Shown one piece after another: positions 7,701-62,600 of a stretch of 64,000 nt of DNA. This DNA comes from Auanema rhodensis (taxonomy: Eukaryota > Animalia > Nematoda). The notes beneath the pieces are model-generated. The model searched no databases. It saw nothing but the letters and a program-made list of their open reading frames with translations, and had not been told where the DNA came from. Numbering within the stretch: position 1 is the first letter of the stretch; each line of letters opens with the position of its first letter. The stretch is from the NCBI GenBank assembly GCA_964057225.1, contig OZ059898.1, positions 7,068,001 to 7,132,000 on the forward strand. Reading direction: 5' to 3'. The translations under genes were made by a program, and so were the position numbers.

Positions 7701-10700
7701 ATATAGAGATTATTAAGAATTGAATACAGATTTAAAGAACAAGATGAAGTAGAATATAAGAGAGAAGAAGTCAGATAGATAGATAGAAAGAGAGAGACAG
7801 AGAAAATAAGAGAAGATGGTTCAAAGTGAACTTCTGTAATAGTTTATTTGCACAAACTGATTTAGATTGAGCAATTATGACTATAAAGAGATGAAAGAGA
7901 GAGGAATATTCTGTTGTTAAGAGGCAATATTTGAAGAAAATAAGCGATAGAACATAGACTAAACTTATATTAGATATATGTTGTATATATTAAATTAATA
8001 TTTTGATCAGTTTTATTAATTTTTTTATTTTTAATTATATTTGCCAACTGGTTATCTTTAAAAATTGCTTTTTCAGTCACGTTCCAGAAGAAAGATCGTG
8101 AAAAGTTCAATCCGAGCATGTTATGTGTCATAGCAAACAAAGTGATCGTGTTGCTCTTTGAAACATTTTCCAATTTCGAGTGTTTTCTCAATAGTATTGT
8201 CATATTATTTAGTTTTATTTAGTTAGGTTCTAAAAGATTTTGGTTTAATTTGATAGTATAAGTACAAGTAGTTGAATGATTGATCTTAAATTATCATGAG
8301 TTTTTTTTCTTTTTTTTATGAAAGAAAATATTAAATTGAATAGTAATTTGAAATAATCAGAGTACAAAATACTTGAATTTCTTTTTGATTTTCATTGGTT
8401 TTCATCTCTTTTCTCCTCTTTTTTTCTTTTAATTTCATGCACACTTGAAAAATTCACATATGTATATAGCTAAAGACGATCAAAAGATTTTTTATAGAAA
8501 TTATTATAATAATTATTTATTAAGTTTAAATTCAATTAATATATTAAGATTATTTTAAAACTTATGTAATAAGCTATTATAAGATCATAAAAATAATGAA
8601 ATGACCATAGTTTATTAGTTTAAAACATGAACCGGATATGCCCTTCAGATAAGTTTTCAACCTGCTATAGTTTATGATATAGAATGGCAAATGAAAATAG
8701 GTTGGATTTGAAGGTCAGAAAAAGATAATATTTAGATGGTTTTGAACTCATAGATGACGTTAGATGGTGGGATGAGAACACGAATTGGAAGAAAAATGAA
8801 AGATATAGATGACCACAATAGGTTTATGATATGATAAAGCATAGACAATGGCATATAAAGGGTAAAAGATCATTTGAAATTTAATTTTAATGTTGATAAA
8901 TGATTCAATTTAATTGAAATGAATGATTGTTTAATGATTTCTATTTTGTTTTTGATTCATAAAATATTTAATAAAGATAGTTTAAACAGTAAAGATTTGA
9001 AGAATCAAGTATTGAGTAAGTATAAAAGATTGAATGGGCTAAAGAATAAGCGAATTGTGATGAAAAAGTTTTGAAACCGGTCTCGATGGATTTCTTTTAT
9101 TTCTTTCTACAATCTTGATGTTTGTTTTCGATTTTTATCCTCTTGATTTACAATTACATGATAATCTGAGAAGTTGTTGATATACTTATATGTACATTCC
9201 ATTTTTATCTTTAATTATAAAAAAATTATAATTATATTTTCATATAGGTTTGAAAAAAATTCATAGTTTCATCCATGGAAAATGAAATTTTCATTGCAAA
9301 ACTGGACGGATCTTTAAGGAATTTTTCTCATTTCATGGTACCACTTTCATTTATTTATTTATATTATTTTTTAATATTGATTACCAAATAACTAAAAAAG
9401 GGGGAAATGTTGAATTTCATTTCCTGCGACAGATGTAACCTGAAAAAAATTTCCCGCGGAAGTTTCAACGCTTTGAAAAAGGTTTTTTTTCTGCATCTTT
9501 GTATGGGTTTTCTAAGCACCTCGTATTGACCATACAGAGAATTCATCGATAAGCATTTAGATCTGACAGATGAGTGTCTTATTATGAAGAAGTTAACTTG
9601 CTTAGGAAAAGCCAAGGAATGAAGCTTTTGTTTGTTGCAGTTTTTAGATGAAATAGCCAGATGGCAGGCATAAGGTGGCCTTCAGATATGGCAAGTCAGA
9701 AAAATCATAGAACGGATAATAAACTGAGATGAAGGAGCGGCCACTTGCATAGTTCGAAAAGAAAAGTCGCAAAACTGGGAACTGATGGTAAGAGGATCGG
9801 GGTTGCATGGTAGAGATGTTTAGGGAAGTTGATTTAGATAGCGTTGGTTAGTTTTGGGTGATTGTACAGAGGAAGCTGATCTGGCTTTTTAGAAAACTTA
9901 TAAGATGGTCATTTAGGATATTATAGGGAGAATAAAGAGACAGTGAGTTTGTGAGTGAAAGAGAAAAGGAGAAAAGAAAAGAGACTAAGAGAGAAAGAGA
10001 ATGAGAGAGAAAGAAAGAGAGAGAGAAAGAGAAATAAAGAGAAAATTAGATAATTGAAAGTGCGAATACATGTTTCCTTTTGAGATATGTTTATTTATAA
10101 TCTAGATTTATAGATAATATAAAATATCTGATCATACAACATCACTCACTGATTATGAATCTAGTTTAGAGTTTTAAGCTTATTTTAAAATATTACTTTA
10201 TTAATATGAGAAAATAATTTCAAATAATATAATTTACATTTATAGATAATATAAAATATTTATTAATTATAATAAACAATATAATTAAAATAAAATTATA
10301 AAATTTATAATATCTTATAAATAAGTATGTAAAATTCATCAGCTTGCGATAATCATGCACGCCAAGATTTTATCGAATGTTCAACATCCGTAGAAGAAAC
10401 AGCTAAAGAAGATGGATTAGAAATAGTTAAAGCCGGTTGTTATGTCATCTACTCTATTCTCCTCGATCTCTTCAATCCTCTACTGTCTTTAATCTAATTT
10501 CTTTCAATCGTTTTTCATCAAAAATCGCTTTCGGGTTCGACTGTGTCGTCATCGTACAGAGTTAGGGACCTAAGCTTACATTTGTTACCCATTTATCGAT
10601 ATCCTGTTTTTCTAGTTCCATGATTACATAATGATACTCATAAATCGAACCATATGTATAAGATGTTATATAATTCTTCCGAATCCAATAAATCTATTAG

Positions 10701-12331: not shown

Positions 12332-14586
12332 CTATGACTTATCACAAGCAGTTGATACAGATGATTGCAGCATTTTTCGTCGCGAATTTTCACGAGTAGA
12401 AAGATTACTAAGGGGTGTAGGTGAAGTTGCTCCGGATGACCGATTTGCAGATGAATTCGTCTTCACATGAGTAGGAGTTGCAGGATCATTTATTCTCATT
12501 GTACGATATGATGAATTCTGACGAAGATTTGCCGCCGAATGAACAGCACGCTGAGAAGCTGTGGATGCATTGGTTCGACGAGATAGAGCTTGTGGAGTTG
12601 TTCCATGCTAAAACAACAGATTATAAATATTATAAGTTTAATTATATGATGTAAAATTGTTAATTTGAAAATAGTACTAACCGATGGAGAATTAGATCGT
12701 TGGTTCATGGACTGGGATCGGTTTAGTTCGCCTTCCAAGAAACGAACAACCTTGTGCATACAAGCATCTTGATAATCATGTACCCATCTGAAAAGAAAAG
12801 AATATAAAAAACAAAAATAATATTATTTTACTTACTTAACGCCATTGTATTTAGTGATATGTCGAATATCTATAGGGATTTGATCTTCATCTTGTGGAAA
12901 TTCAAATGATTGATCAAAGATTGGAATTATATTCTTATGAAATTGGAAAGCACATCGTAACTAAAACTTATAATTAACAAAAGTTTAAAAAAAATGTTTA
13001 TAAACCTCTTTGTGAATCCAATCTTCACAATTATGATCATTTAATAGACGATCAAGTGAATGAGGTGTTAACACAAGGATGAAATGTTTAGCAGCTTGAA
13101 TATTCTTTAAAAGTGATGAATCAAACTTTCCAGCGTAAAGCTTGTCAACATCAATAAAAACCTAAAGATAACATAGTATGATTGATATACGAATCATTAA
13201 AAATTACTTTATATCCACGAAGTTGAAGTAGAACTTTGATTAAACTTGCTAATTGATTACCAGTACTTCGTCGATAACTGATGAAAACATCAATCTGTTT
13301 ACTTAGCATTGCAACTTCTACATCATCAGGATGTTTAGCATCTAAAGAAACATAAATATTAATAGAAATCTTTTAAAAGTACACGAAATACCTCTGAATG
13401 CTTGAAGTAATTTCAAACGATGAATAGGATTCATGATGCCACATGCACTTTGCATGAGGTCATCTGTGAGTAAGGCTAACATAGACCGATTAATACCACT
13501 TGATAACATCTTAAATATAATAAAATACAATTATATAATTATATAATTATATAATATTACCTTATATGTATAAACAGAAAGTTCAGGACTTAATGACATA
13601 AGTAATTGATCAAGATTACTTTCATCAACTCCTGAATAGTCAGCAGCTATTTTGAGACTTTCTAATTCACGCATAAATCGTTTTCGATGTAAACCAGATT
13701 GCATTTCTAAGTCTATTTCTAAGTCACGTTCACTTAAATGTAGTAAAAGATCTCCATCAACCATTTGTCTGGCAAATCTATCTACGTAATCCTCGAAACC
13801 AATCTATAACGGTAAGACTTAGTTTGAACTTTTTTATCAGAAGAGTTACCTTCTTAACCCAATATTGGACATCGTTAGTTGTCCAGCTTGGAACCTGCTG
13901 AGCCAGCTTATAAGGAACTTCTTCTCCGATAACGGTTAAAGCTTCACTTGCAAACTTGGCAGCAACTTCATCGGGTGATGAAGCTACTTCCTTCAGTGCT
14001 TGAATAGCTCCGATTTCCTGAAAATGAAAAAATGAAAATGACGCTGAAGAAAAGGTTTAAAAAATTTTTGTTTGATATTAGAAATCATCTTATCTATTTA
14101 AATGAATTAAAACGTTTGATACATAAACATTAAACGAAAAAACAAACAATCAAAGAGTTTTCGATAAAGATGCAGTGCTGATGATGATGATGATGTTGAG
14201 TAAATGCTGTTATACATTATTTTTTCAAACTTGATTATCTTGAATTATATAAAATTGTAAAATAATTTATAGAGAGAGAGAGAGAGAGAGAATATTGAAT
14301 AACTCAGGGCAGCAAGAACAAGAATGAAATGATGTAGATGAAGGTGATGAAGACGAAGGTATTGGCTGTGGCTAGTCAACCAGCCAAAGCCAACTAGCCG
14401 ATTGTTTGCAAGTGAGATGAGTCATAGCTACAAACGGTTAGCCATTTTGTGTGTATTATATGTATCTCAGGTACTTTACAAATCAAAACTTCCCTCAAAC
14501 GTGGTGAATACAGGATTTCATACTTTAAATCAAATTCTGATATTTATTCTTTTAATTTTCTCGAAATTTATAAAAAAGTAATGACA

Positions 14587-21731: not shown

Positions 21732-24700
21732 AAGAGAGAGAGAGAGAAAAAGTAAAGAAGCTTGTCTATCCACAAGATAGTATGCTATATCTCTTCACAA
21801 CAAACATACAGAGGTTCAGAGACAGAAACTTGCGAAGAAAATCAATTTTTTGTCTCAAAACGTTCAACAACGATTGATTAGCATGAATTTGAAACGAAAA
21901 GAAATGAATGATAAGCTGATAGTAGTGGAATTATAAATAATGACCTTAACTATGGATAAAACAATAAACAATATTTTGAATGATATCAATTAACTGTATA
22001 ATACTAGAATTTTTTTTAATTTTTAAGAAATAATTTGTAATAATATTAGTTATTATATACACAAATTGTACTATATATAGTAATATATTACTATAAATAG
22101 ATTATTTTAATAGTGACGAATGATCATGAACAAGTGTAAAGCTAGATTGAAGAAAGAGGAATAGTAATATGAAAATAATACTGTTTAGTAACGGTGGAAG
22201 GTAGCTGCATATGACAAAGATCACATTGATAGACTGTTGTTAATGATTCTATTCAAATAGACAAAGATCATTCAGATGATGATGATGATGATGTCCAATT
22301 ATACATGTAGAAGAGACAGGGTGGACAGGAATCTGTCCGTATTTAGGATTAAGAGAGTTGATGAGACTTGAATAAAGTTAGGATAAACTAGAGAAGGCAT
22401 AAGCGAGGAGATTGGGTGTTCAAATGATCATCATCATGATCATCATCATGATGACGTGTGAAAGTAGAAGACAAAGATAAGTTAGGATAACCAGCCATAT
22501 TGTATATAAGGATTAGAAGGTAGGATGGTTACGATAAGACAGTTTGAAGGCTGGAAAGTAGCACTGATGAGACAAAGGTTGGAAAAAATACTTTAAAAAT
22601 ACACGTCAACATAGTGATCCAGGAGATGAACATTGAGTGAGAAGATGTGATAGATGAATGAAAGTGATAAAGAGAGCATGTCTGCCTTTCTAACAGAGAA
22701 AAATAGAGTTATGAGATGATAATAAGTTGAATAGAGAGATAGTATATGGCACGTACGCATCATCAGATGACAAAGTATTTGCAAAATCTAATTGATTTAA
22801 ACAAATAACAGATTCGAATAGTAATAATAATAATAATAATGATGATGATGGTGATGATGATGATAATGATATTATGGAACATGATGATGAGGTTTCTAAT
22901 CAGTTATATAGTTAGATAGACAGTTATTCAAAAAATAAAGATATCATAGGTGAAAGTATAAAATTTGAATCAAATGACAAGTTATCTTGAGAAAACTACA
23001 ATGTAAAACCACAAACACATTTTTGGGATTGCTGTCATTTTCAAATTATGAATCAGTCAAATAAAAAATAATTTTAAAAAGGAAGTAGACTCACAGGTGC
23101 GTATGGATGGAAGAAACGACGTGTTCGTGAACGGCGAAATCGTTCTAAGGCCACAGATTTTCTCATTAACTGCGATGGACGTGCCAATATTGCTGTCTTC
23201 GTTTGCATATTGTTCGGACGCCAATCCAGATCGGCAATGCAGGTTGTAGCAGCTCCATTGTTCAGCTTCGGTAAATGAGCAAGTGATGTTGGACGAGTTG
23301 GCTGGACAGCAGCAACTGGTACTGGAGACTTAAGTGGTGAAGGCATCGGAGCGACATGTACAGTGCTGAGGCTGTTGGTATTAGTCACAGCCGAAGTTAT
23401 CGTAGATGAGCTGATGGATGAAGCAACTGATTCGATATTGGATGAGGATGTTTGATATTGATCAATCAAATTGCCATCATCTGCAACCATACATGATGCT
23501 GTCATTGGAGCATCACAGCACATTGTCGCTGTATTAGATGATGTGGTCGGAATACAACTTTTGAGATAGCAGTTAGCTTCAGCGGATGCGGTTTGGTCGT
23601 CGTAAACCGTCGACAACGGTCGACAAACTGCCGACGAAGGCGAATAGACGTGAATGGCCGGAATACTAGCAGCGGAATCAGCTCGAGAGCTGGTAGAAGT
23701 ACAGCAGGTGCACTTAGTGGATGCAGTCACACTAGGAATATTACAAGTGATAGGTGCAGAAGCGCAATAGTTGCGACAACTACGCCAGATAAGCTTCGTC
23801 AGATTGTCTGTTTGTCCGGAATATACTAGATACCGGATACAGGCAAACGTACAGAATAAGATAGAAGCAAATGTAGATCTAGTAAATGAGGATGATTTGC
23901 AAATTGCAAGACTTCTGCAGGCGTAATTGACAATTATCCTGAATTAAAAGAATAGGATTTACAATCAGATGACAAGACAAATTCACTGATAACGATGAAT
24001 ATTCAAAATATGAAATTAATTTAAATAAATGTTGAGGAATGAAGTAAAGGATAAATAGACACGAGCGCGTGTAATGTGGGGGCCCCACTACAAAACGGGA
24101 CACCACTGCACAGAAAGACTTATAACTCGTCGGTGGTCGGCGCCCTGACAGCCTGTAGACAGACTGTTAGACCCGCCTACCACCGGCTGGTCGGCACCGC
24201 CCACTTACCATCATCACCGCCGGCGCTCTCCGTGCAAATGATGAGAGACTAGAAATTGTACAGAAAGATGGAGAGAAAGGCAGAAAATGAGTTAGTGGAT
24301 GATAGACGGGTGTAGTAGAGGCATGATCATTACTATCAGCTGTACGCTGATAATACAGAAAGATCTTATAAATTGGGTATGGGTGAAAGTTTAAATACTC
24401 ACTAAGAGTTAATACATATGTCCTAAGGATATTTCATGTAATATTTTTGTACGATAAAGGTGCAAAGAGAGGGAAAGGCTAAGAGAGAGAGAGAGAGAGA
24501 CATAAAATATGCTTATCAGAGATCTCTTAGCACAAAGATCTATGTTCTATGAATTAGTATAGCCTCTGAATCATTTCATTATTTGAACTATATATGTATA
24601 TATTATAGTTCATCGATAACAACAAGATCATTTTGATCATAAAAATGTATTTATAAAAAGCTTAGGTAAAATAAGTTCTAGAACTATATGTATGTGTGCA

Positions 24701-26477
24701 TGTGTGTAAGAACAGTTTGCAGACATACAATCACCAATACAATTCAATTGGCTAGTGCTTGTTGCAATGTCATTGAGAACCATGTGATTGGCTTTTCTTG
24801 AATGCCTCGAGGGTACTAAATGGTGGCTTTCAAGTTGCTACAGCCGACAACGATGATAGCGATGTCATTCATCTAGTTGTTGAATCATCAACTATAATAA
24901 AGCTACAAAAAATGCTGAAATTTTCATTTTTTCTTCCAATTTACTGCAAAACTCAAAGAAATAAAAAGGCGATAGTTGAATAAACATGAAATATATGATA
25001 TATATAGTATAAAGTGAACATTTTCTTATATATTCAATTCAATTGTCTAAAAATTATAGAAGGAACCTTCTGAATATAACATTGAACCACGAATTCGTTG
25101 AATAAGTTGTCGAAGACACATAAAACTATGTGTTGTCATCATTGTTTCCTGACGATTAAGCTATTTCGAACTATCAGTTTGATGATGAAATGAAATTATA
25201 TTTTAATATAATGATGATAATGCTATATGATAATCAAATATATTAATTCTTCATCTTATATAATCAACTCTTTACTTCATCAGCACAAATTATACCGTTG
25301 ATTCGTTGATCATCAGAGTTATTATCAAAATTTTTCGTGTGATAAACGTACTAAATAGCTTGGATTGTCGAATGATATCGATGAAATGCTACAAACCATT
25401 ACAATCGTAATCAACAACTATAGAGCTATCACTAGTTTAATAATCCAAAGACCTGAGGAATGCATGATTATGAACAGCAATCATGTTTTACAGTTCCTGA
25501 TATTTTCAAACATTAAATGAAAATTCACAATATACATCATTTTTCTTCTAGTTTTTCAAAAAAAAAGTTATATTTGTGCAGAAACTACTCAAACTACAGA
25601 ACTTTTTAAAAATAATATTGTCTGTTTTGTAGGGGTCAATTATGAGACTAGTAGTACCAGTATCTAGTTAATTGGACAAGCGGACACTTGAACTTGAATT
25701 CCAGACAGAGAAACGTTAGAGAGAATTGAAATATTATGTGTGTGTGAGAGAGAGAGAGATAGTGAGAATGAAAATACACAGAGAATAAGAACCTGCCAAT
25801 CAAGACGACGTGTCATTTCTCGCCTGTTTCCGAATATCAGACAGAGATCGTCGTCATCGGAACATCAAAAGCATACTAGAATTCAAAAGCTGACCTAGCG
25901 ATAACCGTGAGAAACATGGAACATGAGAGAAATCGAAATCACCTAGCTTGTACTTTGCTTATATAAGGCCACAGTATAGGAAGAGAGAGACGGAGAGATA
26001 GGACAAAGAATGTCAATGGGATTCTTACAAGCATTAGTTAGTATAGTTATTTGGTAAGTAAATTAACCCACATAATCATAACAAATATCAGAAAAATAAA
26101 ATTTAACAAAGAGTGGGTGGTGGGGGTGGAGGCAAAGAACAGAGCAAAGAAAGGGAAACAATAGAAAGATACTGAAAGTAAGAGAAAATAAAGAAAATAA
26201 GTAAAGACTGTTAACAAATTTTGTTACCAGAAAAAAAAGAAGAACGCGATAACTTTTGTTCCATATGATCTGAAGATGTCTTTGATCTCTGGATGATGAA
26301 TTAGATAAAGAATGTCCATAAAACTAGGTGTGTGAAATTTCGAACAACAAGGGTAATATACAATTTTACACCAAAAGTCTAAAGATTCACTAGTTCACGT
26401 GGCCATATAATAGAGAACATGGTCTAGGAAAAAGAGAAATAGGGTAGAGAGAGAATGGGCAACAAAGAGTAAAAGAA

Positions 26478-26528
<51 letters not shown>

Positions 26529-29500
26529 AGCATATAGAGAAAGAATCAGCGATTAACAATGTGATTTGACGATTGATGAAACGTTCTTTAAAAAACTTAT
26601 CATAGAAATGAAAATCTATAATTATCGTCAAAAGATTCATAGGCAATAAGAAAGATGTAGACAGTGAATTCAGTAATGAAAAAGCTTGTCAGAAGTGTTC
26701 CAGACAAGACAGGTGTATCACATCACCAGTTTCTTGCATCTTCTAATGATTGTGAAAAATATTTGTAGAAGTCTGGCAAGATAAACAGTCATAAACAGAG
26801 AGATACGATTAGGATCATATAGGATTGAATACAAACCAAAAATAAAAAAAGAAATTGAAAATTTGAATACAACGTGAATTGTGATGAAACTGAATCAAAA
26901 ATGTACTATATATCGTATAGTATACATATATATATATATATATATACTATACTACACTATACTATATATATATATATATATATCAAAATCATATTTCATC
27001 ATGTTATTTAAAAACATTACTTATCAATCATTCAAATAATTTACTTAATTTCACGTGATACATCTTCTCTTTAAGAAGTAAGATCATACTTTAAAATTCA
27101 TTTTTTTCTAATCATTAATGAAGATACAAACATCTACAAATATCGTTTTTTGTTACTTTTTCTCTGCTCCTGCAATTCAGAAAACCAAATTACAAAAATC
27201 AAAGGTTGACATCAGAAGCCAACAAACCTATCATTCTATGTGCATGAGGTATTCCCTGTTTCTCTATGTTTCTCGATAATACTCTTTCATCATACTAACT
27301 TATCAATTTATTATATACTATAACAATAGAATATATCCTAGATTATATGAATCTGGAATATTAGATTATTTATTATACTATATAAAGGTTAGATGTACAG
27401 AAGTGTTTTGACTTCTTGTCGAATTTAGATAGTTCATCTGACTTTACTGATAGCAAACTTCCGCTCTTCGTTTTCTTAACATAGTTCCGGTTTCCGTATC
27501 AAATCAGCTTTCTTTCTTTCGGCCTTTCTTGCAGCCTCTCTCTTTCTGATTCTCTGATATTCTCCATTTTATTCATTTGCAATTTCACATCAAAGTGATT
27601 ATGTTATTGAGTAATAGTTCAAAAATAGAAATAACCTGCCTATTTTGGGAAATTTCTAGAAAACTCTCAATTCAGATGAACAAATGGTTGACAGAGAGAA
27701 ATATTTAGAGAAGAAGAGGAAGAGAATAGAGTTAGATCATGAAGAACATCCGATTTATCGAGCAAAAAACAGTACAGATCTCATAACTATATATATATAT
27801 ATATATATATAGTATATATATAGAATACTATCTATATTGGATTTTCAAATTAAACCAGAAAAAAAGTTCATATTCACATTCAAATATATTTTCAAATAAA
27901 AAAAATAAATAATGAGAAATATGAGATTAATTTTAATCAAAATGTGAAAGAAATATTTATCTTATCGATAGTAATAGTAACTATTGAAAAATTAAAAATG
28001 GTTTGTACGTTTGATTACATTCCATTGCTTCTCTTACTTAGTTTTTGTATTAAACCAAAGGTTTAAGCTTACTTGTTTGAGAATAGCAAAAGAATGCGCG
28101 TAGGCGCCAGAGAATGTGATTATTTGTCTAAATACATAATAAACTTTTCTAACCTGGAACCTTGGCGAATTATATTCTTATAAGATAATAATTCTTCATA
28201 ATCCTTATAAAAATATCAAATAATGTAAGAATGAAACAAAAATATTAAAAATAGAGCATTGAAACTTTAAATTTTGCACATACAATGATAAATAGAGTAT
28301 ATTCAAAGTTATATATCTTCTATATTATGTAAACTGTTATATGAATATAGCAATATCATCTATGTATCTATATATACTACTTCAGTTTAGCTATTTATTT
28401 GCCGAAATTTAAATAATTCTTTTTAATCAATCGAAAGAATTAATAACATCCGGCAATAAAGGCCACATGATTGAAGAGAATGATATGAATGGAATGAGTG
28501 AATATTTCTGTACAAAATTTAAACTTTTCAAGTACTTTAGTACATTGAACCTCAATAAATGTATAGTTAAATAGAATAAAAAAAAAGAGAAATTAGTAAA
28601 ATATATCATTTTTTTCTTAATTCTAAACTATAATAGAATATATAGATTAATAAAGAAAAATAATTAAAAATGTTATGTATTATATAAGACTTATAGAGGA
28701 GGAGGGGGGATTCTAAAGAACATAACAGCAAGTTGTTTGACATCTAATGGTATGTATTACAAGATTTTTGAATCAAAACCAACGCACCCTATAGTTCTAA
28801 TTGGAACAGATAGAAGATAATTGAATTCAAGATCATTTTTTAACTATCAAATGTCAATTAATACTAATTAATATTCTCCCTAACCGGAAATAAAACAAGA
28901 AAAACAGTAATAACATATTTGGCAGTAATATGAAATACGTGATAATCACTTTGATAAGTTTTAAACTTATTTTATGAATTATATATCGTATTATAAACAT
29001 AATTATTAATATATTAAAGACCATATACATGTATATAAACGAAAAATGATATCCACGTGAAATACGTGACTTTTCTATATGCTAATTATCATTTCTATCT
29101 TTCTAATCATCTCCAAATGGTTGATCTATGTATAAGACTAACGATAAAAGAATGGGAAAATCGTAATATACCCCCAGATATTATTCAGTTTTCGTTAACA
29201 TTATCGTTTATATTTCTATTTTTAAAATTCAGTTAAAGATCAAGTTGAAGATAGATGATATAACATCAATAATGTGTGAAATTCAAAGTAAAATGAATCA
29301 TTTTCAACAGTTCAAGTGTTAAAAATTTCAACTAGTCCAGATAAGAATTATGTCGATCAAATTTAGTCGATACAGAACAGCAAAGTCCAAAAACAAATTG
29401 AAATACAAAGAAAAATAAATAAATAAACAAATGATATTAATCACTTACGTTAGAATAATCATAATTTTATTGGTTTATCTACGAATTAATTATATTGATA

Positions 29501-30372
29501 ATACTAATAGTTTATATCTAAAATCAAAAAAAAAACGTTGACATGCTAGTTAATCATATTATTTTGTATTATCAACATAACTAAATGATGATTCATCTTT
29601 TATATTTTTGCAAAGAAAAAATCAAAACTCTTATCCAAAAACGTAAAGAATGTATTCTAATATCAAACGATAATTATTTGGTTTATATATTATATATATA
29701 TATATATAAATATTATATTAAACATACTTGAAATACTTCCAACTTATTCTGATCTTTCTTAATAGTTGCTTCCATAGTAAAATGATATGCTGCTGCACTG
29801 TGTGCTTCACGTTTAGCTGATTTCAGAACTGGTAACAATCTAAAAATAAATATAAATAACTCTAAATATATTATAAATATAAAAAAAAATTAAAATTTTA
29901 CATTTATTCCTATTTCAATTATTGTAAATATAGAAGTTTTTGAATTTTATAGAACATTATTAATTTATTTTACATGTCATTCTTCTCCACATTTACATAT
30001 TAATTCTTAAAATGTTTCACGCAAGTTTCACGTGCATCTTAGCTTTAAAAGCTTTGAAACAGGCTTCTATAAGCTTTTATTCAAGTTTTAAGTTGTATCA
30101 TAGACTGTGTAGCTTGGCCTACAGATAATTAGATTGGAGACTAAAGTTTGTTCTTGTCTCCTCATCTCTTCATTTGTCATTCATCTTAACTATACTATAT
30201 GTATAGTTTATGATAACACAGAATTATCACTAATTATTCATAATTTGAAACATTTTCCGATCAAATAATATATTGGATAGAGACACTTGAAAATGAACAG
30301 ATAATCAGAGAATCAATCATGATAGCTTCAATAATTCTGTTAATTCTATTGTCTCTCTTTCCTTCTCTCTCT

Positions 30373-53126: not shown

Positions 53127-53644
53127 ATGAATTTTTGTATAATACATGGTTGTAATTATAATTTTTAATATTTAAATCAAAATGAGAAAATGAGAGAAAC
53201 GAAAACAAAAAAAATGAATGACACATTCTACGTGAAAAGAACATATGAAAACAAATTAATTTGTTTAAAAATTTGATGAAGAAGTAAGAAAATGAAGAGA
53301 AAAAAGTATATAAAACATATATTATATAGCTATATATGTATATAATATTATATAATAAAGAAAGAATGAATGGTAAACTACTACGTTGACTGATGAGAAC
53401 ACAGAAATCGATCAGAAATTTACATGAAGATAGGTTAAAGGTAATGAGAGAATGATGTATACATATATATTCGTTGTATAGCATCATAATTATATAATAT
53501 AATTATAATAACTAATCACAATTCTCCTGACACAGGTATTTGGGAAAAAAAAAATTTTTTTCTGTTGAAAAAAAAAATATTTAGATGAATATATTCAATC
53601 TAATATAATATGATATATCATTTTCAAACTAAATCTTAGAGATT

Positions 53645-56600
53645 CTAAGAAGGTGGCACTGTTCTATGTGATGTGGTGTGTGTATAGTGATCTGATGTTG
53701 TTATATCATACTGTTCAGTTTCTGTTTCACTATCTTCAGATTCTGAGTCGGCACTTGCATGATGAACCGTTTGAGTTGTGCTCACGACGTTTCCATGCTC
53801 ATCCCGAACTGTGGTTGTGCGAATTTCCTTGGTTGTTACGTCGGTTGTTACACGACGCTCAATTTCTTCCAATGTACCATCCGAAGAAATGGATGCTCCA
53901 TCATCCAAATAAGCTTGAAGAGCTCCAATGTTATCATGTCCAACCATTTCATCACCATATGGCTTCAGCTTGGCACGTGGGATGGTGTAGTAATCAGATC
54001 CTAATATTTCTTGACCAGAAGCACTGGCATCGCTGCCTCCACGTCCACCGAAGCATCTGCATCTGGCACAGAGCCACAAGCAACATAACAAGGTGAGGAG
54101 CAAGAAGAGAAGAGCCAAAAGAAGCATGAGGATGAGACCGGCCTTAGATGGAGCAGCTTCACAGAATTGTCCAGAGTATCCATCAACACAGGCACAGGTA
54201 ACATTATTGGTTAAGCTGTCATGAATACAGTCACCATGTCCGTTACATAAACCACACAAGAGAGCAGCACAGATACGTCCGGGCTCAGATGGGTTACCGT
54301 CAGTATATCTGAAATATATAATTAAGTACAAATTGTTATTATAAGATCTTACCCTTCTGGACAAGCACATTCATATCCATTTTTCTTATCAGTACAGATA
54401 GCAGCAGCTGAGCAATTGTGAAGACCAAGAGCACATTCATCAACATCTTGACTACGGAGACAGATTGAGTCACCAAGTCCAGCCTAATATTCATTTATTA
54501 TCCAATAATAATAATGTTTCATATAATTAAATACCTCAGATAATCTATCAGATTTACGGAGATCAACGAAGCCAGGCTTACAATCACAACGAGCTTGTTC
54601 ATCAACATTATGACAAGTTGAATTGAGTGGACAATAGTTAACATCAGAACAGTAATCAATGGAACAAACACTTCCTGGAATTGCTCCTTCTTGAGCAGCA
54701 TTAACATATGGAGCAACACATTCACATCTAAAATATAATGTAAAGATAGTATATAATATAAAGATATTGTTACTTGTATAGATAATCTAAATCAATACAA
54801 CGAGCATCTGGTGAGCATTCATTTAACTCTGGCTTCTCACATTCATTTACTCCACGATAGCTAAGACATTGACGACCTGGTTTAGATGGGTTCAAATCGC
54901 GATATCCACTTGGGCATTCACAACTGTAATAATTAGTTAATATTATAATTATAAATTATAAAAATTATAATAAACATACGTATATCCATGTCCATCTTCA
55001 TGACATACAGCAGATGGATGACAATCACTACGATAACAAGTAGAGAATGGATTCATTTGATCAGGAGAAATGAAAAGTTTTGATTTTCCAACCTAAATTA
55101 TAATTACATATATGTATATAATTAACTATATTTATATAATTATACCTCATGGTTATTCTTTTTAGCTATATAATCAATTAAATCAGTAAAGACAGTTTTT
55201 GGTTCAGCAACAGCTCCTTTAACGAAATAACTGGTGAAATTGTAGAGGATTCCGTGATCCCATGACTATAAATTTATAAATATTTTATAAAATTATAAAG
55301 AAAAGTATGACAAAAATAAAATAATTTGAATAATATACTAACCACATTACGATCCTTTGGATTTTCAATGTCATTGACCTCAGCAACGATGAAAGAGCTT
55401 TGAAGAGGAGTCTTATCATAACTTTCAGCGACTCCACTTTCGAATCTATTAAAATAAAATAAATAATTATTTCTTATAATATGATTTTACCTGTTGACAA
55501 GAGTCTTAGTCAATGGTTCTCTTGGGTTACTGAGAGCTGGAGAATATTCAACGAATTCATTACCATCACGGATGACATATAATGGTAAATTCCAAGATTC
55601 AACCTAAAACGAATTGTTTTCAATTTATAATTTAAGCTCGAAATATACCAGACGACATTGGCTTTCAGCATTCTTTCTCTTCTGGCCTTTAGGACAACCA
55701 CAGATCTTGCCAGCAATACATTCTTCTCCAAGTTCTGTTTTACAGAAGGTATTTCCACAAGTAATTCCCGAGACTTGATCTTGAGGGAGGCATGGATCAA
55801 GAAGCTTGAAGTCATCTGCGGCCTTCAATCTATCGACACGTCCACCACGAGCAACAACAGCTTCAGCGAATTCTTGGAAGACCTGAGTAGAATGAAATGA
55901 TTCAAAGAATTACTAATTGATTACTATACCTTGCACTGATCGATATCGCCATTTCCAGAAAGAAGAAGAGATGAATTAACAAGCAATCCACGATCCCATG
56001 TTGAGTTTTCAACCTTAGGATTTGTAATGAACTTAATATCAGTAGCAACATAACGAGGAGCAAAGCTAGTTTCTTTCAAAATATCACCCAATCCCTATAA
56101 TATGAATATTTAAATTAATTATATGATATAGCTAATATACCTTCTTGGCACTTTCAACAATTTCAACATGCTCTGGGCTGCTTGGCTTGCTGTAGTCATT
56201 GGAGTAATGAAGTGGTTCATCATCAAATTCCATGACACGTATAACAAGTGGAACCTAAAATAGTAAAACATATTATAATAAATATAAAAACTTTATAACC
56301 TCAGTAACAGGAATACATGGATCTTTTGGACTGGCACGTCCTTCTCCTGGACGACATCCGCATTTCTCTCCTCCGATACAAACCTTAATATCTATCATGA
56401 ACAACAATCAAATATCATTTAAGCATACCTCATGCAGATCTTTATGGCATACGGTATTACCACAAGCATATAGATTTGGAGATAAAGTTGTTGGCTCAGC
56501 ATCTAGAGGCTTGTCAATGACCAGACCTAATTCTTAAAATGAGAAAAATGTTTTAATGAGCAAGCGGAAGCGATCGAGATATCCTCGAAAAACTAAAAAG

Positions 56601-59600
56601 TAAATGCTGAACTGCCTTTTCACCATCATACCCATCTTAAGCTGATAAGAATATACACAATATTCGTTAATTAAAATGCTTATTTATAAAATAAAATAAT
56701 TAATTAATTAAAAAAATATATGAAGCTATAGAAATAAAAACAGAAAAAAGCATAGAAGATGGCTGATTTGCATTTGTTTGGCAGAATAGCTGTTAACTTA
56801 AATTCTGAGATTATATAATGAATATAACAAAAATAATAATAAAATTAATATATAATCTCAGAATAAAGTTAAATTAAAATCAAATTGTTATACTCACCAA
56901 CGCAAACACGACCAGCAGTTGCAGGATCAGTACTTTCATCAAAGAAGCCAGTCTTACATTGGCATAAGTACCCATCATCAGTATCAATACAATCAGCATT
57001 AAGATCACAATTATTATCATTTCGACTTAAACATTCATTAAATCTGTAATAATTATAATAAATATAGAAGATATGATTATATAGGAGATATAACCTGCAA
57101 ACACGTCCAGGCTTAGATGGAACCATATCCTTATATGGTTCATTACATTTACATTCATATCCTTCAACAGTATCAATACATTGAGCATGTCTATCACAAT
57201 CATTTAAGTTTTCTGATTGACATTCATTGATAACTGAAATATTTTAATTAAATATTATAATTTATGTTGTTAATTATTATTTATTTCAAATATAACTTAC
57301 TGAATTTGCAGTTTGTTCCTGGTTTGCTCAGATCTTGATCATGATACTCTGGCTTACATTTGCATTCATAACCGTCTTCTTTATCAATACATAATGCAAA
57401 TCGAGAGCAATTATTAAGATTTGGAATACGGCATTCATCAACAAGCTGAAATAAGTTTTTGATTATAATTTTATAATTTTTCTATTGATATTACTCCAAA
57501 GCAGCTACGTCCTGGTTTTGATGCATCAAGTGAAACATCTTTAGTTCCAATAGGACAACTACATTCATATCCGTCATCAAGATCACGGCATGTTGCTACA
57601 GGATCACAATCATTCAATGATTGATCTAAGCATTCATTAACTTGTTCTTGGCATTCACGTCCTAAATTATTAAATATATATGTATATAGTATATAATATA
57701 TACAAACCAGGTGTAATTGGACTTTTATCAACATAACCATCGCGACATTTACATGTATACTTCTGTGGTCCATCAATTTCTTCACAAATGGCAGCAGCAT
57801 GACAATCGTGTTTTTTATCATCACTACAAACTTGTTCCAAACATTTACGTCCTGCAACATCAGTTTTTGTAGGAGAAAAGGTTTTTTTTTTAAATTATTT
57901 GTCAGCCATTCTTGACGTAAATCTGATGTGAAATACAGAAGCAATTGATTACCTGGACGATGTGGAAGAGGACTTCTATCCAAAAATCCAGCATTACAAA
58001 CACATTCATAATCGTTTGAACCACGTTCAATACAACGAGCATTACGATCACAATCATGCTTACCACCTTCACAAATTTGATTAACTAAAATATTATATAG
58101 TTAATGATAACTATTATAAATATAATTATTACGTTTACGACAATCACGTCCTGGATTTCTAAGTTCATCATGATCAACATATCCATCCATACATTGACAT
58201 TTATATGAATCACGTGTATCTAAATAAGAAAATATTATTAATTATATCATATAAAATATAATTAATTACCAATACAAAGAGCATGTTCATGACATGTATT
58301 CAATTGGCTACTAGCACATTCATCAACCAATGCTTTACAAGAAACACCACCAAATACTTGTGGATTTGGAGAAATATCAACATATCCTTCTTTACATCTA
58401 TATTTATATAATATTATTAATATTTCTTATATATATATATGATAAATACCTGCAAAGGAATCCATCAGGTAAATCAATACATTCAGCATTTCCAGAGCAA
58501 TTATGACGACCTTCAGCACATTCATTATGTTCTAAAATTTATATTTTTTAATAAATTCATAATATATAAATTATAATATTCTTACGTTCTTCACAGATTC
58601 GTCCAGGCTTTGTCTTAGGACTTGTTGATTTATCAAGGAATCCAGAGTTACAGGTGCAAATGTATGATTCATCAGTATCAACACAATGAGCATTACGATC
58701 ACAATCATGAGTTCCAAGAAGACATTCATCAGTTACTATAAGAATAATAAATTAATTATATGATATAATTAATATAATTATATAAACTTACAGCAAATTT
58801 CGGTAATTGGATGACGCTTATAATTGCGAGGACATTGGCAAGTAAACAGACCACGTCCATTTGGAAGACATTTTTCTCTAAAATAACATTTAAATGTAAA
58901 TGTAATTATATAGTTAAGCTAACTTTTTACGGATTTCACATGAATCTGGGATTGATGGATCACATGTACCAATTTCTTGGCATTTTCCAGATTTTCCATT
59001 CTTCTCATATCCTTCTCTGAAATACATTTAAGATTTAACTAATTATAATACAAGATTATTATAAGAAACCTGCATTGACAGACAAATTCTCCACCTGGAC
59101 CGCGAATACATTGTCCATTTGGTCCACATGTACTAGCATCTCCTGGATTACATTCATCAGTAGCTTCGGAAGTTGGTGGTCCACCAATTTCTAATAAATA
59201 ATTATTTAATTTATATTTGTTTTGTGTGAACATACTGCAAACTCCAGTATGTGGATCACGGAATCCAAGATCAGCTGGACAAGTACATCTCCAGTTTCCG
59301 AATGGAGTTTTCTCACAGATTTCAGGATCTGGGCAAGATGTAGCAATCTCAGGATTACAAACATCACCTCCACAAGCCTTGAAATAGAACGTAAAGTTTT
59401 ATAAATAATTGCATGATTAGCATACTTTAGTTACTGGATGTTCTTCAAATCCTGCTGGACATCCACATGTATAACGTCCATTCTTCATAGTACAAACTTG
59501 GTTAAGTGCACGATCACATCCATTATGATTATTTGGATCACATGGACCTTAAGATACATAATCAGAATATAGTTAGTATGTGATTAACAAACCGTTATCT

Positions 59601-62600
59601 GGAGTAGTTGGGGCTTCACTCTGTGGACATGCTACTTTCTGAATAGCAGATCGAAGTCTTGTGTTCAAATCTTCGAATCCATTAACGTGGAAAGTACGAT
59701 CTTTAGCTCCAGAAATTTCTTCTAATTCAGAATCAAGAACGTGATTGGTAACACCAACAGCAAACAGTTGAATATCCAAACGACGAGCATTATCAGCAGG
59801 GATAGTAACATTATCCTGAATATAAGTAATTTATTTTATTATAAATAATATACATACTTGACTTCTTCCATCAGTAATTACGATACCAACACGAGTGACA
59901 CCAGCATCACGACCACGAGCTCCACGTCTCTCGGAGAAAGCTTCATTGGCAACATGTTCGATAGCAGCTCCAGTTCTAGTTAATCCAGTCAAATAACTTA
60001 AATTATAGTTTTAAGAAAGAATAATTTAACAATTTAACTGACTCAATGCTTCTAATAGCTTGATGAAGGGCAGCACTATTCTTGTATTCATTCAATCCAA
60101 ATTCATGACGAATTTGATCAGAATATTGAACAACAGATACACGAGTCTTTTCTGGGCTGATATCGAAAAGCTCAGTAAACTCAGATAAGAAACGAAGAAC
60201 CTAAAATATAAACTTTACAACTTGAAAATGCAACGATTTTACTTCATTCTGGAAGATATAAGATCCAATAGATCCCGAACCATCGATAAGGAAAACAAGA
60301 TCAGTAGCTTGAGCTGGACTGAAATAACACAACGTTTGAATATTAGCAACTTGATTATTGAACTTACCAAGCAGTGCTTAAAGTACATACACGACCAGGT
60401 GGTAGATTAGCATTAGATGAAACATCTACGTATCCATTAATACATTTACATGTATATCCATCAGGTAATTGAACACAATCGGCATTCTTATCACATGAAT
60501 TCAAAGAAGAATCTGAACACTGATGAGATCCTTCAGAACAACGACGTCCAGGAGCCAAGTTATAGCGAGAAGATACATCAGTACAGCCGGATTTACATTT
60601 ACATAAGAATCCATGCTAAATCATTAATTATTTAGAAATAAAATAAAATTATAAAGAAAAATTACTTGAGTATCTTCACATTCAGCCATTGGAGAACAGT
60701 CATGTGTTCCATCAGCACATTCGTTTTTAACTAAAAAAATATATTTTATACATAATTAATTATAATTAAATACTTTGTTGGCATTTTCTTCCTGCAAGTC
60801 TGAATGGATCAGGTGAAATATCCTTGAATCCAGCTTTACATTGACATCTATATCCATCATATGTATTTGAACATAATGCATTATGATCACATTCATTTTG
60901 ACGTTCACATTGAGAAAACACTGAAATATAATGAAAACTCTTAATATTATAGTTAATTATTTATATTTTTTTATTATATAATAGTTAACATATTTTAAAA
61001 CTTACGTTTACATTTTCCATCAGCTTGTTGCACTGAACCACGTTTGCATTGGCAAACCATTTGTCCCTGAGGGTTGAATCTACATTCCTCATTTGGTCCA
61101 CAAGTTCTACTGTCAGAACATTGATTATGAACAGACATATATCCATAATGTTCTGGTCCTTTTGGCCTGTTACATACACGTCCAGGATAATGATTGACAT
61201 CTGATGAAGCATCAACAAATCCAGGTCGACATCTAAAGAATAATTTGAGAATGTTAAAAAAGATTCATTTACAAACCTGCATTCGAATCCGTCTGGACGA
61301 TCGAAACAGTCAGCATTGGATGAACAATCAGCTGTACCATCAAGACATTCATTTTTCATTTCAACACACTAATTATAATTAATTATAATTAATAATTATT
61401 ATTTGAATAATATACCTTTCTTCCTGGAAGTTTACTAACAGAATCAGAAATATCTACAAATCCTGGTTGACAAACACATTGGAAGCCTTCAGGAGTATCA
61501 ACACATGAAGCTTTAGTATCACAATCAACTCCATATCTATAATAAATCAAATAAATGATTATAATTATTAAAAATAATTTATTTACGTTTCTCTTGCTCC
61601 ACATTCATTTTGAGTTCGTTGACAGATTCTACCTGGCTTATTAACACGATCTACTGATACATCAGCAAATCCAGATTTACATTGACAACTATATCCATCT
61701 AACTATAAATAATATAAACAATATAATATAATTAAAAATAAATAAAATTACCTTATCAATACAGTTAGCATCCTTGTGACAACCATTAGTTGATGGACGA
61801 GCACATTCATTAACAAGAAGACATCTTCCGTCAGATAATCTATTCACACCATTTGGACATTCACATTTGTATTGACCATTTGTGAAAACACAAACTTCTT
61901 GTTTCTCTTGACTACATGATAATGGATCATCAACTCGACATTGTAGACTTCCTTTAAATTATTTTATATAATTTATATAATTAAATATTATTAGAATAAT
62001 GAAGCTATAACAATTTAAAATTTTCAATTCAATGTGATGTCAAAAAACCTTCCAAAACATGTTTTCAAATGTTTTTTTTTAAAAACTGAAGTGGAAAGAC
62101 TTCAGCTTTCATGTTAATTCGATTAAAACGTTTTTATAAAAGATAATAATAGATATTATATTTATATATATATATATATAATTATTATAATTAATATTAT
62201 ATTAGTTAATATAATTATATTCAAATATTATATTTCTTATTCTTATGTTCTTCTTTAGTGATATTCTTTTTCTTTCTTTTTCTTTATTTCTAACATCACC
62301 ATCAAAACCGCAAAACTAGTTGGAATCGTTAACCAAAGGGTGTCGTTAGACTAACAGTTGCAATTCAATAAGACATCTTACCCTTCATCTCCTCTCTACG
62401 CCCTTCTAACTATCTATCTAACTACCCACCTACCATTCCCATCTAACATCTATCCCACCAATTTGCTCGTTACAACTTCTTTCATACTTTTCTACCAAAG
62501 TATTATTAAAACTTATATCTATATCTATATATATATAGAAATATACTTAAATAATCTATAATTATAATAATATAGTTAATAATGAAATGAAAAATATATT

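What the first reader, a model, noticed from the sequence alone, without database searches (positions are those of the whole stretch)
23095..23938. Hidden 844-nt exon that could replace or bypass the auto-inhibitory ARM domain of TIR-1
Seen: the frame is open exactly from a ttcAG acceptor (23939-23940) to a GTGAGT donor (23094), 281 codons. This is longer than the ORF track shows, because that ORF starts at a GTG. The exon enters in phase 2 and exits in phase 0, the same phases as the last ARM exon (29839-29728) and as the whole block 36479-29728. Established: SARM1/TIR-1 ARM repeats auto-inhibit the SAM-TIR NADase, ARM-less SAM-TIR is constitutively active, and C. elegans has short ARM-lacking tir-1 isoforms. 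Inference: the exon may be (a) the first coding exon of an ARM-less isoform (ATG 23523), (b) mutually exclusive with exon 29839-29728 (…EWLQR|IIVNYACRS…), or (c) joined to any of the three phase-2 first exons. Options b and c would be a splicing switch between an inhibited and a de-repressed NADase.
Basis: partly seen in the sequence, partly recalled or inferred. Interest (0 to 1): 0.8.

Follow-up and report, generated by a model that had tools for sequence, protein, structure and literature searches.

The report
ARM-less tir-1 isoform first exon
The 844-base open frame is a real, expressed exon of a nematode tir-1/SARM1 gene that starts the already known kind of short isoform lacking the self-inhibiting ARM domain; its only odd feature is a 415-base ATG-free leader that looks like coding sequence.

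Summary
Frame 23937-23095 (minus strand) is open for 281 codons, between a ttcAG acceptor and a GTGAGT donor.

- **Expression.** Assembled contigs of four runs from one study cover exactly 23094-23940 and none of the flanking intron.
- **Downstream junction.** The contigs run on into the letters of exon 14017, so junction 23095->14017 is shown.
- **Canonical isoform.** Alignment to C. elegans TIR-1 (PDB 8p2m) shows that the long isoform joins 29728->14017 and skips this exon.
- **Conservation.** Only the last ~85 codons are conserved. They recur in the same intron of a compact tir-1 orthologue, and in Strongylus, Ancylostoma, Diploscapter and Caenorhabditis japonica. The C. japonica model reads ...[10 protein letters not shown]|EIGAIQ, the same junction.
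- **Upstream end.** The contigs stop at the acceptor with only 0-5 foreign letters. The first ATG of the exon in any frame is the in-frame 23523.

This kind of isoform is already known in C. elegans. Options b and c have no support but are not excluded.

One point is unexplained. The 415-nt stretch before the ATG has no stop in frame, no ATG in any frame, and strong codon periodicity.

The parts
23095..23938 (-). Alternative exon of tir-1/SARM1, 844 nt, present in transcripts
   Evidence: Open frame. Contigs of runs X1-X4 cover 23094-23940 with no differing letters and no cover in the flanking intron.
23939..23940 (-). AG of the 3' splice (probably SL1 trans-splice) acceptor, in the context cttttaattcAG|G
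   Evidence: Contigs leave the genome sequence here, with 0, 1, 1 and 5 unlike letters beyond it.
23089..23094 (-). GTGAGT donor of the exon
   Evidence: The loose end at 23094 in all four runs is the reverse complement of window 14016-13988.
23524..23938 (-). 415-nt stretch before the first ATG: no ATG in any frame, no in-frame stop, strong 3-base periodicity. It is either a 5' leader or an N-terminal extension.
   Evidence: probability of no ATG 0.00075, of no stop 0.0014; chi2 40.1, reached by 0 of 5000 conditional simulations, and in phase with the 3' part. No homologue for these residues.
23521..23523 (-). First ATG of the exon, in frame, in the context gcgacaATGt; the likely start codon. 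Further in-frame ATGs lie at 23505 and 23490.
   Evidence: The conserved Met of relatives (MDGG, MSGG, MSSE) aligns near here.
23095..23340 (-). Conserved C-terminal block of the exon (aa 200-281): SPLKSP...RPTSL..LP...[30 protein letters not shown]
   Evidence: All homologues match only this part. The invariant columns are in alignment A1.
23095..23175 (-). Invariant basic motif [12 protein letters not shown]. It resembles a PY-NLS and a site for basophilic kinases.
   Evidence: Invariant in 7 of 7 sequences of A1. The last 45 aa hold 11 K+R against 2 D+E. Its function was not tested.
13850..14017 (-). Common exon ([11 protein letters not shown]...: end of the ARM domain plus linker) to which the alternative exon is spliced
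   Evidence: Aligns to C. elegans TIR-1 8p2m_A residues 382-440. The junction letters are in the contigs.
29728..29839 (-). Last ARM exon upstream; the canonical partner of exon 14017 in the long isoform
   Evidence: Aligns to 8p2m_A residues 345-381 and ends exactly one residue before exon 14017 begins.
24000..24260 (-). GC-rich island (48% GC) just upstream of the acceptor; candidate internal promoter and outron
   Evidence: No transcript contig lies on it. Its role is inferred only.

Best explanation
The 844-nt frame is the alternative first coding exon of a short, ARM-less isoform of the nematode tir-1/SARM1 gene. It is the orthologue of the tir-1b-type exon of Caenorhabditis.

**Shown**
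- The exon sits in the 15.7-kb intron that the long isoform removes (29728->14017).
- It is present in RNA-derived contigs with both predicted boundaries.
- It is spliced in frame to the common exon 14017. That exon carries the last ~28 ARM residues and is followed by SAM-SAM-TIR with the catalytic DWIHKE.
- Its last ~85 codons are conserved and syntenic across rhabditid nematodes.

**Inferred**
- Transcription starts at an internal promoter, the GC-rich island at about 24000-24260.
- The outron is replaced by SL1 at 23938.
- Translation starts at the first AUG (23523). This gives a ~143-aa Ser/Thr/Ala/Pro-rich N-terminus that is probably disordered and ends in the invariant basic motif [12 protein letters not shown].
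- Without the ARM domain, which holds the NMN/NAD pocket and clamps the TIR domain, the protein should be a de-repressed SAM-TIR NADase or scaffold. Its activity would then be set by promoter use, and possibly by localisation or phosphorylation through the basic motif.
For: - **Canonical junction.** Exon 29838-29728 aligns to TIR-1 8p2m_A residues 345-381 and exon 14017 to residues 382-440.
- **Transcript contigs.** In four runs they cover exactly 23094-23940, with zero depth in the flanking intron.
- **Downstream junction.** A 29-letter loose end equals window 14016-13988. With the shared G this makes k-1 = 30 letters, the signature of a graph branch with the canonical isoform.
- **Synteny.** In L002 the ARM exons end at 7434, the homologous exon lies at 9205-9429 with its ATG at 9163, and the SAM exon starts at 10616.
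- **Homologues.** They occur in Strongylus vulgaris, Ancylostoma ceylanicum, Diploscapter pachys and C. japonica. The C. japonica model reads ...[10 protein letters not shown] followed directly by [11 protein letters not shown].
- **Start codon.** ATG 23523 is the first ATG of the exon in any frame, with A at -3.
- **Trans-splicing.** The genome carries more than 3400 canonical SL1 genes. SL1 ends in AG, which fits contigs that match the genome to 23940 and then differ.
- **Literature.** C. elegans tir-1b encodes SAM and TIR without the autoinhibitory N-terminus and acts as an activated form (PMC10121217). tir-1d also lacks ARM, and the isoforms have separate promoters (PMC12857417).
Against: - The 5' partner of the exon was not read. 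The 0-5 letters beyond the acceptor are not printed, so SL1 is inferred rather than seen.
- The 414 nt before the ATG are open in frame and show codon-like periodicity stronger than that of the conserved 3' part. A plain 5' UTR does not explain this.
- A 415-nt leader after a trans-splice site is unusually long for a nematode (my own knowledge).
- The runs are only guessed to be RNA by their record, and all come from one study. Their RNA origin rests on the exon-exact contigs.
- I could not fetch the C. elegans tir-1b sequence itself. Orthology to it rests on C. japonica and on synteny.
Confidence: 0.7

Rival explanations
1. The mRNA is the same SL1-spliced transcript, but translation also starts upstream of 23523 at a near-cognate codon, for example CTG 23802 or GTG 23730. 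This would add up to ~90-138 Cys/Ser/Thr-rich residues. The AUG-free leader would allow both the extended and the AUG-initiated protein.
For: - The frame is open and no ATG occurs in any frame over 415 nt.
- Periodicity gives chi2 40.1, reached by 0 of 5000 simulations conditioned on no stop and no ATG. It is in phase with the coding 3' part and strongest at 23799-23662.
- The amino-acid make-up of the 5' part (S, T, A, C) resembles that of the 3' part.
- In-frame CTG, GTG and ACG codons exist.
- SL1 itself is open in this frame (read from its sequence).
Against: - There is no homologue for these residues.
- The upstream regions of relatives show no periodicity, and S. vulgaris has an in-frame TAA 38 codons before its Met.
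- There are no translation data.
- The signal could be a relic of a recently lost upstream start.
Confidence: 0.15
2. In some transcripts the exon is an internal coding exon, cis-spliced from a phase-2 donor: 31126, which would replace exon 29839-29728, or the first exons ending at 44363 or 41315. All 281 codons would then be translated between an N-terminal exon and SAM-TIR.
For: - The frames are compatible.
- The 5' part is open and codon-periodic without an ATG of its own.
- Contig ends at the acceptor could also arise from several partners of low cover.
Against: - In four runs no contig carries more than 7 letters beyond the acceptor, whereas the 3' side shows the full 30 letters of a shared exon.
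- The differing contig ends (+1, +3, +3, +7 letters) fit a nearby transcript end better than a graph branch.
- Donor 37408 is excluded, because its last letters would have aligned to 23943.
- A 41315 donor ends in GA, not AG.
- Option b would break the last ARM repeat.
- No relative shows such a model.
Confidence: 0.1
3. The exon is a non-productive or purely regulatory inclusion. For example, inclusion after 29728 gives a stop after 19 codons and a target for nonsense-mediated decay, with no protein made from the exon.
For: Joining 29728 (phase 0) to 23938 puts the exon in the frame that stops after 19 codons.
Against: - The protein-level conservation of the last 85 codons includes 21 invariant residues, across Strongylida, Diploscapter, Caenorhabditis and this species.
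- The exon leaves in frame into SAM-TIR.
- The published tir-1b is active in C. elegans (PMC10121217).
Confidence: 0.03

Closest known systems
C. elegans tir-1b (F13B10.1b), the endogenous ARM-less SAM-TIR isoform of TIR-1/SARM1
   Same: - Both are an alternative 5' exon inside the tir-1 gene, spliced to the common SAM-TIR exons.
- Both give a protein without the autoinhibitory ARM domain.
- The Caenorhabditis (C. japonica) model carries the same ...[15 protein letters not shown]|EIGAIQ junction.
- tir-1b is described as an activated form (PMC10121217).
   Different: - The exon here is far longer: 844 nt, with 143 codons from the ATG, against about 46 codons in C. japonica.
- It has a 415-nt AUG-free, open, codon-periodic stretch before the ATG.
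- The C. elegans sequence itself could not be fetched for a direct alignment.
C. elegans tir-1d, an ARM-less isoform with its own promoter (PMC12857417)
   Same: It lacks the ARM domain, is driven by a separate promoter, and is proposed to have higher NADase activity.
   Different: The tir-1d exons are all contained in other isoforms (PMC12857417). The exon here is isoform-specific.
Engineered SAM-TIR fragments of human SARM1 (ARM deletion)
   Same: They have the same domain content. Removal of ARM gives constitutive NAD+ hydrolysis and axon degeneration (established knowledge; used in PMC10121217).
   Different: Those fragments are artificial truncations. Here the ARM-less form is a natural, conserved splice or promoter isoform with an added conserved basic N-terminal motif.
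Basic PY-NLS (transportin/Kap-beta2 signal)
   Same: A basic stretch followed by R-X3-PY (RRFFHPY), in a low-complexity and probably disordered region.
   Different: The match is by pattern only. No binding, localisation or structural test was done.

Membership tests
TIR-1/SARM1 gene (nematode orthologue) | ARM repeats, two SAM domains and a TIR domain with the catalytic Glu, in that order | tested here: met
   The exons align to C. elegans TIR-1 8p2m_A: ARM residues 345-381 and 382-440, SAM residues 438-520. The TIR exon contains DWIHKE. tblastn shows the same exon order in L002.
tir-1b-type ARM-less isoform, first exon | It lies downstream of the ARM exons, in the intron before the common exon that begins EIGAIQ | tested here: met
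   Here the exon is at 23938-23095, between 29728 and 14017. In L002 it is at 9163-9432, between 7434 and 10616.
tir-1b-type ARM-less isoform, first exon | It is spliced in frame to the common SAM-TIR exons in RNA | tested here: met
   Contigs of four runs continue from 23095 into the letters of 14016-13988, and the exon leaves in phase 0.
tir-1b-type ARM-less isoform, first exon | Sequence homology to the Caenorhabditis exon | tested here: met
   The profile search finds C. japonica A0A8R1IP81 (P0010, E 7.5e-11). The invariant motif is [12 protein letters not shown]. C. elegans itself was not retrievable.
tir-1b-type ARM-less isoform, first exon | It has its own 5' end (internal promoter or SL trans-splicing) and its own start codon, with no ARM exon upstream in the mRNA | tested here: inconclusive
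   Contigs end 1-7 letters past the acceptor in all four runs, and the first ATG is in frame. SL1 genes are present. The leader letters were not seen.
   No contig carries ARM-exon letters upstream of 23938. Joining 29728->23938 is out of frame. These are contigs from one study, so absence is weak evidence.
PY-NLS | A basic or hydrophobic N-terminal motif plus R/K/H-X2-5-PY in a disordered, positively charged region | tested here: inconclusive
   The pattern RRFFHPY and the 11 K+R in the last 45 aa are present and conserved. Disorder and karyopherin binding were not tested.

The most novel reading that the evidence does not exclude
The exon may have two outputs.
- As an SL1-capped first exon, its AUG-free leader lets ribosomes reach AUG 23523 and make the tir-1b-like ARM-less NADase.
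- The same 138 upstream codons may also be translated, either from a near-cognate start or after cis-splicing to a phase-2 upstream exon. This would add a lineage-specific Cys/Ser/Thr-rich extension, possibly palmitoylated or membrane-associated, to a de-repressed SAM-TIR enzyme.

This would explain why the leader is at once free of ATGs, free of in-frame stops and strongly codon-periodic.
Probability: 0.2. Interest if true: 0.6.

Novelty: new member of a known kind. Interest (0 to 1): 0.35.

Why it matters
SARM1/TIR-1 is the central executioner of axon degeneration and a p38 immune scaffold, and its ARM domain is the brake.

- **Conservation.** The ARM-less isoform has a dedicated exon that is conserved and syntenic across Rhabditina: Caenorhabditis, Diploscapter, strongylid parasites and this species. 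This argues that the 'brake-less' enzyme is a selected product and not an annotation curiosity of C. elegans.
- **The basic motif.** The invariant [12 protein letters not shown], with invariant Ser and Thr, is to my knowledge not discussed in the papers I read. It points to a concrete handle, such as localisation or phosphorylation, by which a constitutively active NADase could be kept safe.
- **Annotation.** Several genomes annotate this exon as an orphan 'hypothetical protein' (S. vulgaris, A. ceylanicum, D. pachys). It should be merged into tir-1.
- **The leader.** The AUG-free, codon-periodic leader is a small, testable puzzle about translation start choice.

Tried and rejected
- **Family and structure-sequence searches.** Pfam and PDB sequence search of the 281 aa gave nothing meaningful. 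The one PDB hit, BfpB at E 0.011, is low-complexity noise.
- **Exhaustive protein search.** HMMER against 1.84 billion representatives found four hits, all to aa 195-280, and nothing for aa 1-194. The word search with the single sequence added little. The profile search added C. japonica and two Logan ORFs.
- **Repeats and copies.** Tandem repeats as a cause of the periodicity were rejected. A repeat or transposon origin was rejected because the exon is single copy.
- **A small upstream exon.** One ending at the GTAAGT donor near 24212 was rejected. The required frame has a TGA, the ATG frame stops after 19 codons, and no contig lies there.
- **Donor 37408 as partner.** It is excluded by where the contig alignments stop.
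- **Short contigs.** Two short contigs with 20-nt matches at 25193 and 27099 lie on opposite strands and were treated as spurious.
- **Periodicity in relatives.** It is not significant in their upstream regions, but the test lacks power there. Even the known coding parts of L003, L005 and L006 are not significant.
- **L005 against S. vulgaris upstream of the Met.** I counted 3 synonymous and 7 non-synonymous changes, with indels of 3 and 9 nt. This is inconclusive.
- **Hydropathy of the extension.** The maximum is 1.47, below the usual 1.6 for a membrane helix.
- **Promoter scan.** The bacterial promoter scan is irrelevant for a eukaryote.
- **Literature.** Chuang & Bargmann 2005 was not held.
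- Exons were searched one by one, by reference.

Full report
**Where the window lies.** The window is G000:C6:7068001-7132000 of a 181-Mb, AT-rich nematode genome. The minus strand between about 44500 and 12300 carries a tir-1/SARM1 orthologue.
- The SAM exon 13803-13534 hits C. elegans TIR-1 (PDB 8p2m) at E 7e-35, ahead of human SARM1.
- The TIR exon holds the catalytic DWIHKE.

**The observation.**
- Translating 23937-23095 gives 281 codons with no stop. The other two frames are full of stops.
- The frame opens two codons before a good nematode acceptor (cttttaattcAG|G, exon base 1 = 23938). It ends at CCT|GTGAGT.
- Two neighbouring coordinates are off by one: 31126 and 36478, not 31127 and 36479.
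- The exon is a GC island (39-49%) in AT-rich introns. It is single copy and holds no tandem repeat.

**What the long isoform does.** Exon 29838-29728 aligns to TIR-1 8p2m_A residues 345-381 (...KLEVFQ). Exon 14017- aligns to residues 382-440 ([11 protein letters not shown]...). The canonical ARM-SAM-TIR mRNA therefore joins 29728 directly to 14017, and the 844-nt frame lies inside that 15.7-kb intron.

**Transcript evidence.**
- The look-up of sequencing runs gave four small runs of one study. Their record only guesses RNA. They hold 0.59 of the words of 22800-24200, and the exon is 60% of that stretch.
- Laid on 22650-28500, the contigs of all four runs cover 23094-23940 with no differing letter. 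There is zero depth in the adjoining intron. Exon-exact contigs can only come from spliced RNA.
- At 23094 every run has a loose end. Its reverse complement is identical to window 14016-13988, the start of the EIGAIQ exon. Junction 23095->14017 is therefore shown.
- The loose end is 29 letters plus one shared G, which makes k-1. This is what a de Bruijn unitig gives when it meets an exon shared with another isoform. The canonical form is probably present in the same runs.
- At the other end the contigs follow the genome to 23939 or 23940 (the AG). They then carry 0, 1, 1 and 5 letters that do not fit the genome, and stop.
- The transcript is therefore spliced at 23938. Whatever lies upstream is very short or very thinly covered.
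- A normally covered cis-exon would have given 30 or more letters.
- A graph branch among several partners would have given the same end in every run.
- The pattern fits a 22-nt spliced leader best. The genome has more than 3400 canonical SL1 genes, and SL1 ends in AG.
- Donor 37408 is excluded as the partner, because its last letters would have aligned to 23943.
- I could not see the foreign letters themselves, so SL1 remains an inference.

**Relatives.**
- An exhaustive HMMER search of 1.84 billion representatives found only four proteins, all matching aa 195-280. A profile search added more.
- The hits are short orphan ORFs or 'hypothetical proteins' of Strongylus vulgaris, Ancylostoma ceylanicum and Diploscapter pachys, several Logan contigs, and a C. 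japonica model.
- All end in ...RF(R/K).S(R/K)TRRFFHPYA and then run into an intron. The C. japonica model is the exception. It continues ...[16 protein letters not shown], the junction I see in RNA here.
- On the 32-kb contig L002, tblastn with the window's exons shows the same gene order. The ARM exons end at 7434, the homologous exon lies at 9205-9429 with its ATG at 9163, and the SAM exons start at 10616.
- The exon is thus ancient within Rhabditina and syntenic.
- Alignment A1 has 21 invariant columns, nearly all in the last 35 residues, including an invariant Ser and Thr.
- The relatives' start Met (MDGG, MSGG, MSSE) aligns near our three in-frame ATGs (23523, 23505, 23490).
- The length from Met to donor varies from 46 codons (C. 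japonica) to about 205 (Diploscapter).

It is a new member of a known kind, not a new switch.

**The unexplained part.**
- The first 415 nt of the exon contain no ATG in any frame. The first ATG is the in-frame 23523 (P about 0.00075 by Markov-1 simulation, about 0.007 if codon-position composition is allowed for).
- The same stretch has no in-frame stop (P 0.0014), while the other frames have 10 and 4.
- It is strongly 3-periodic, with chi2 40.1. Sequences simulated under 'no stop, no ATG' give a mean of 7.5 and a maximum of 28.5 (0 of 5000 reach 40.1). The maximum over 68 intron windows is 33.6.
- The pattern is C at codon position 2 and T at position 3. It is in phase with the conserved coding part (r 0.63 against 0.32 and -0.94) and strongest at 23799-23662.
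- A plain UTR explains the missing ATGs but not the open frame and periodicity. Plain coding sequence explains the latter but needs a start that the exon lacks.
- Three readings remain:
  - translation from a near-cognate codon in the SL1-capped mRNA;
  - a relic of a recently lost upstream start.
- Relatives give no help. Their upstream regions are not periodic, though the test has low power there. S. vulgaris has an in-frame TAA 38 codons before its Met.

**Mechanism.**
- Shown: an mRNA holding this exon joined to the SAM-TIR exons exists, and its 3' third is under protein-level constraint.
- Inferred from established SARM1 biology: a protein that starts at 23523 keeps only the last ~28 ARM residues. 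It lacks the NMN/NAD allosteric pocket and the ARM-TIR clamp, so its SAM octamer should present active TIR domains.
- Control would then lie in the internal promoter (the GC-rich island at 24000-24260 is a candidate) and in the N-terminal region.
- The invariant basic motif fits a PY-NLS pattern (R-X3-PY after a basic run). It also fits basophilic kinase sites (RxxS/T at the invariant Ser and Thr). Neither reading was tested.

Noticed in passing
G000:C3:6741531-6766487 and C3:14134320-14139114 (loci L007, L008): More than 3400 exact or near-exact copies of the canonical nematode SL1 leader plus donor (GGTTTAATTACCCAAGTTTGAG|GT), in tandem arrays with periods of about 252 and 341 bp. This is far more copies, and a much shorter unit, than the ~1-kb SL1/5S repeat of C. 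elegans.
   Followed up: no
window 24000-24260 (minus strand): A GC-rich island (48% GC in a ~28% GC region) 60-320 nt upstream of the acceptor, with no transcript contig on it. It is a candidate internal promoter or outron of the short isoform. It contains ...GATGATG|GTAAGT, which looks like a donor but is not used in the runs laid.
   Followed up: partly
L005:~300-340 and L006:~430-470: A 33-nt block (TCGTCTCTGGTCACTGCGCATTGTTTG and flanks) about 150 nt upstream of the start Met. It is ~97% identical between two strongylid species, more conserved than the coding part, and each copy is preceded by an AG. It may be a leader or regulatory element of the short tir-1 isoform.
   Followed up: no
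L005:75-456: In this strongylid contig all five ATGs upstream of the conserved Met are in frame, and none is out of frame. Across six species only 2 out-of-frame ATGs occur in about 1480 nt of upstream open frame. Depletion of upstream ATGs seems to be a general feature of this leader.
   Followed up: partly
P0002 (S. vulgaris VDM84855.1), P0004 (A. ceylanicum EYC03386.1), P0006 (D. pachys PAV75739.1): Public annotations list this exon as separate small 'hypothetical proteins' that read through the donor into the intron. They are probably mis-annotated fragments of tir-1.
   Followed up: partly
window 23521-23523 onward: The predicted N-terminus begins Met-Cys-Cys, a pattern seen in N-terminally palmitoylated proteins. 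It is not conserved in the relatives.
   Followed up: no
window 53600-62000 (minus strand): The neighbouring gene has many EGF-like Cys-rich exons, a VWA-like stretch and a C-terminal membrane helix. It is an extracellular-matrix or adhesion receptor type gene and was not examined.
   Followed up: no
window 44363, 41315, 37408 (minus strand donors): Three alternative first coding exons of the long isoforms, each with its own ATG. All end in phase 2 and feed the exon that starts at 36478. This mirrors the multi-promoter layout of C. elegans tir-1a/c/e.
   Followed up: partly
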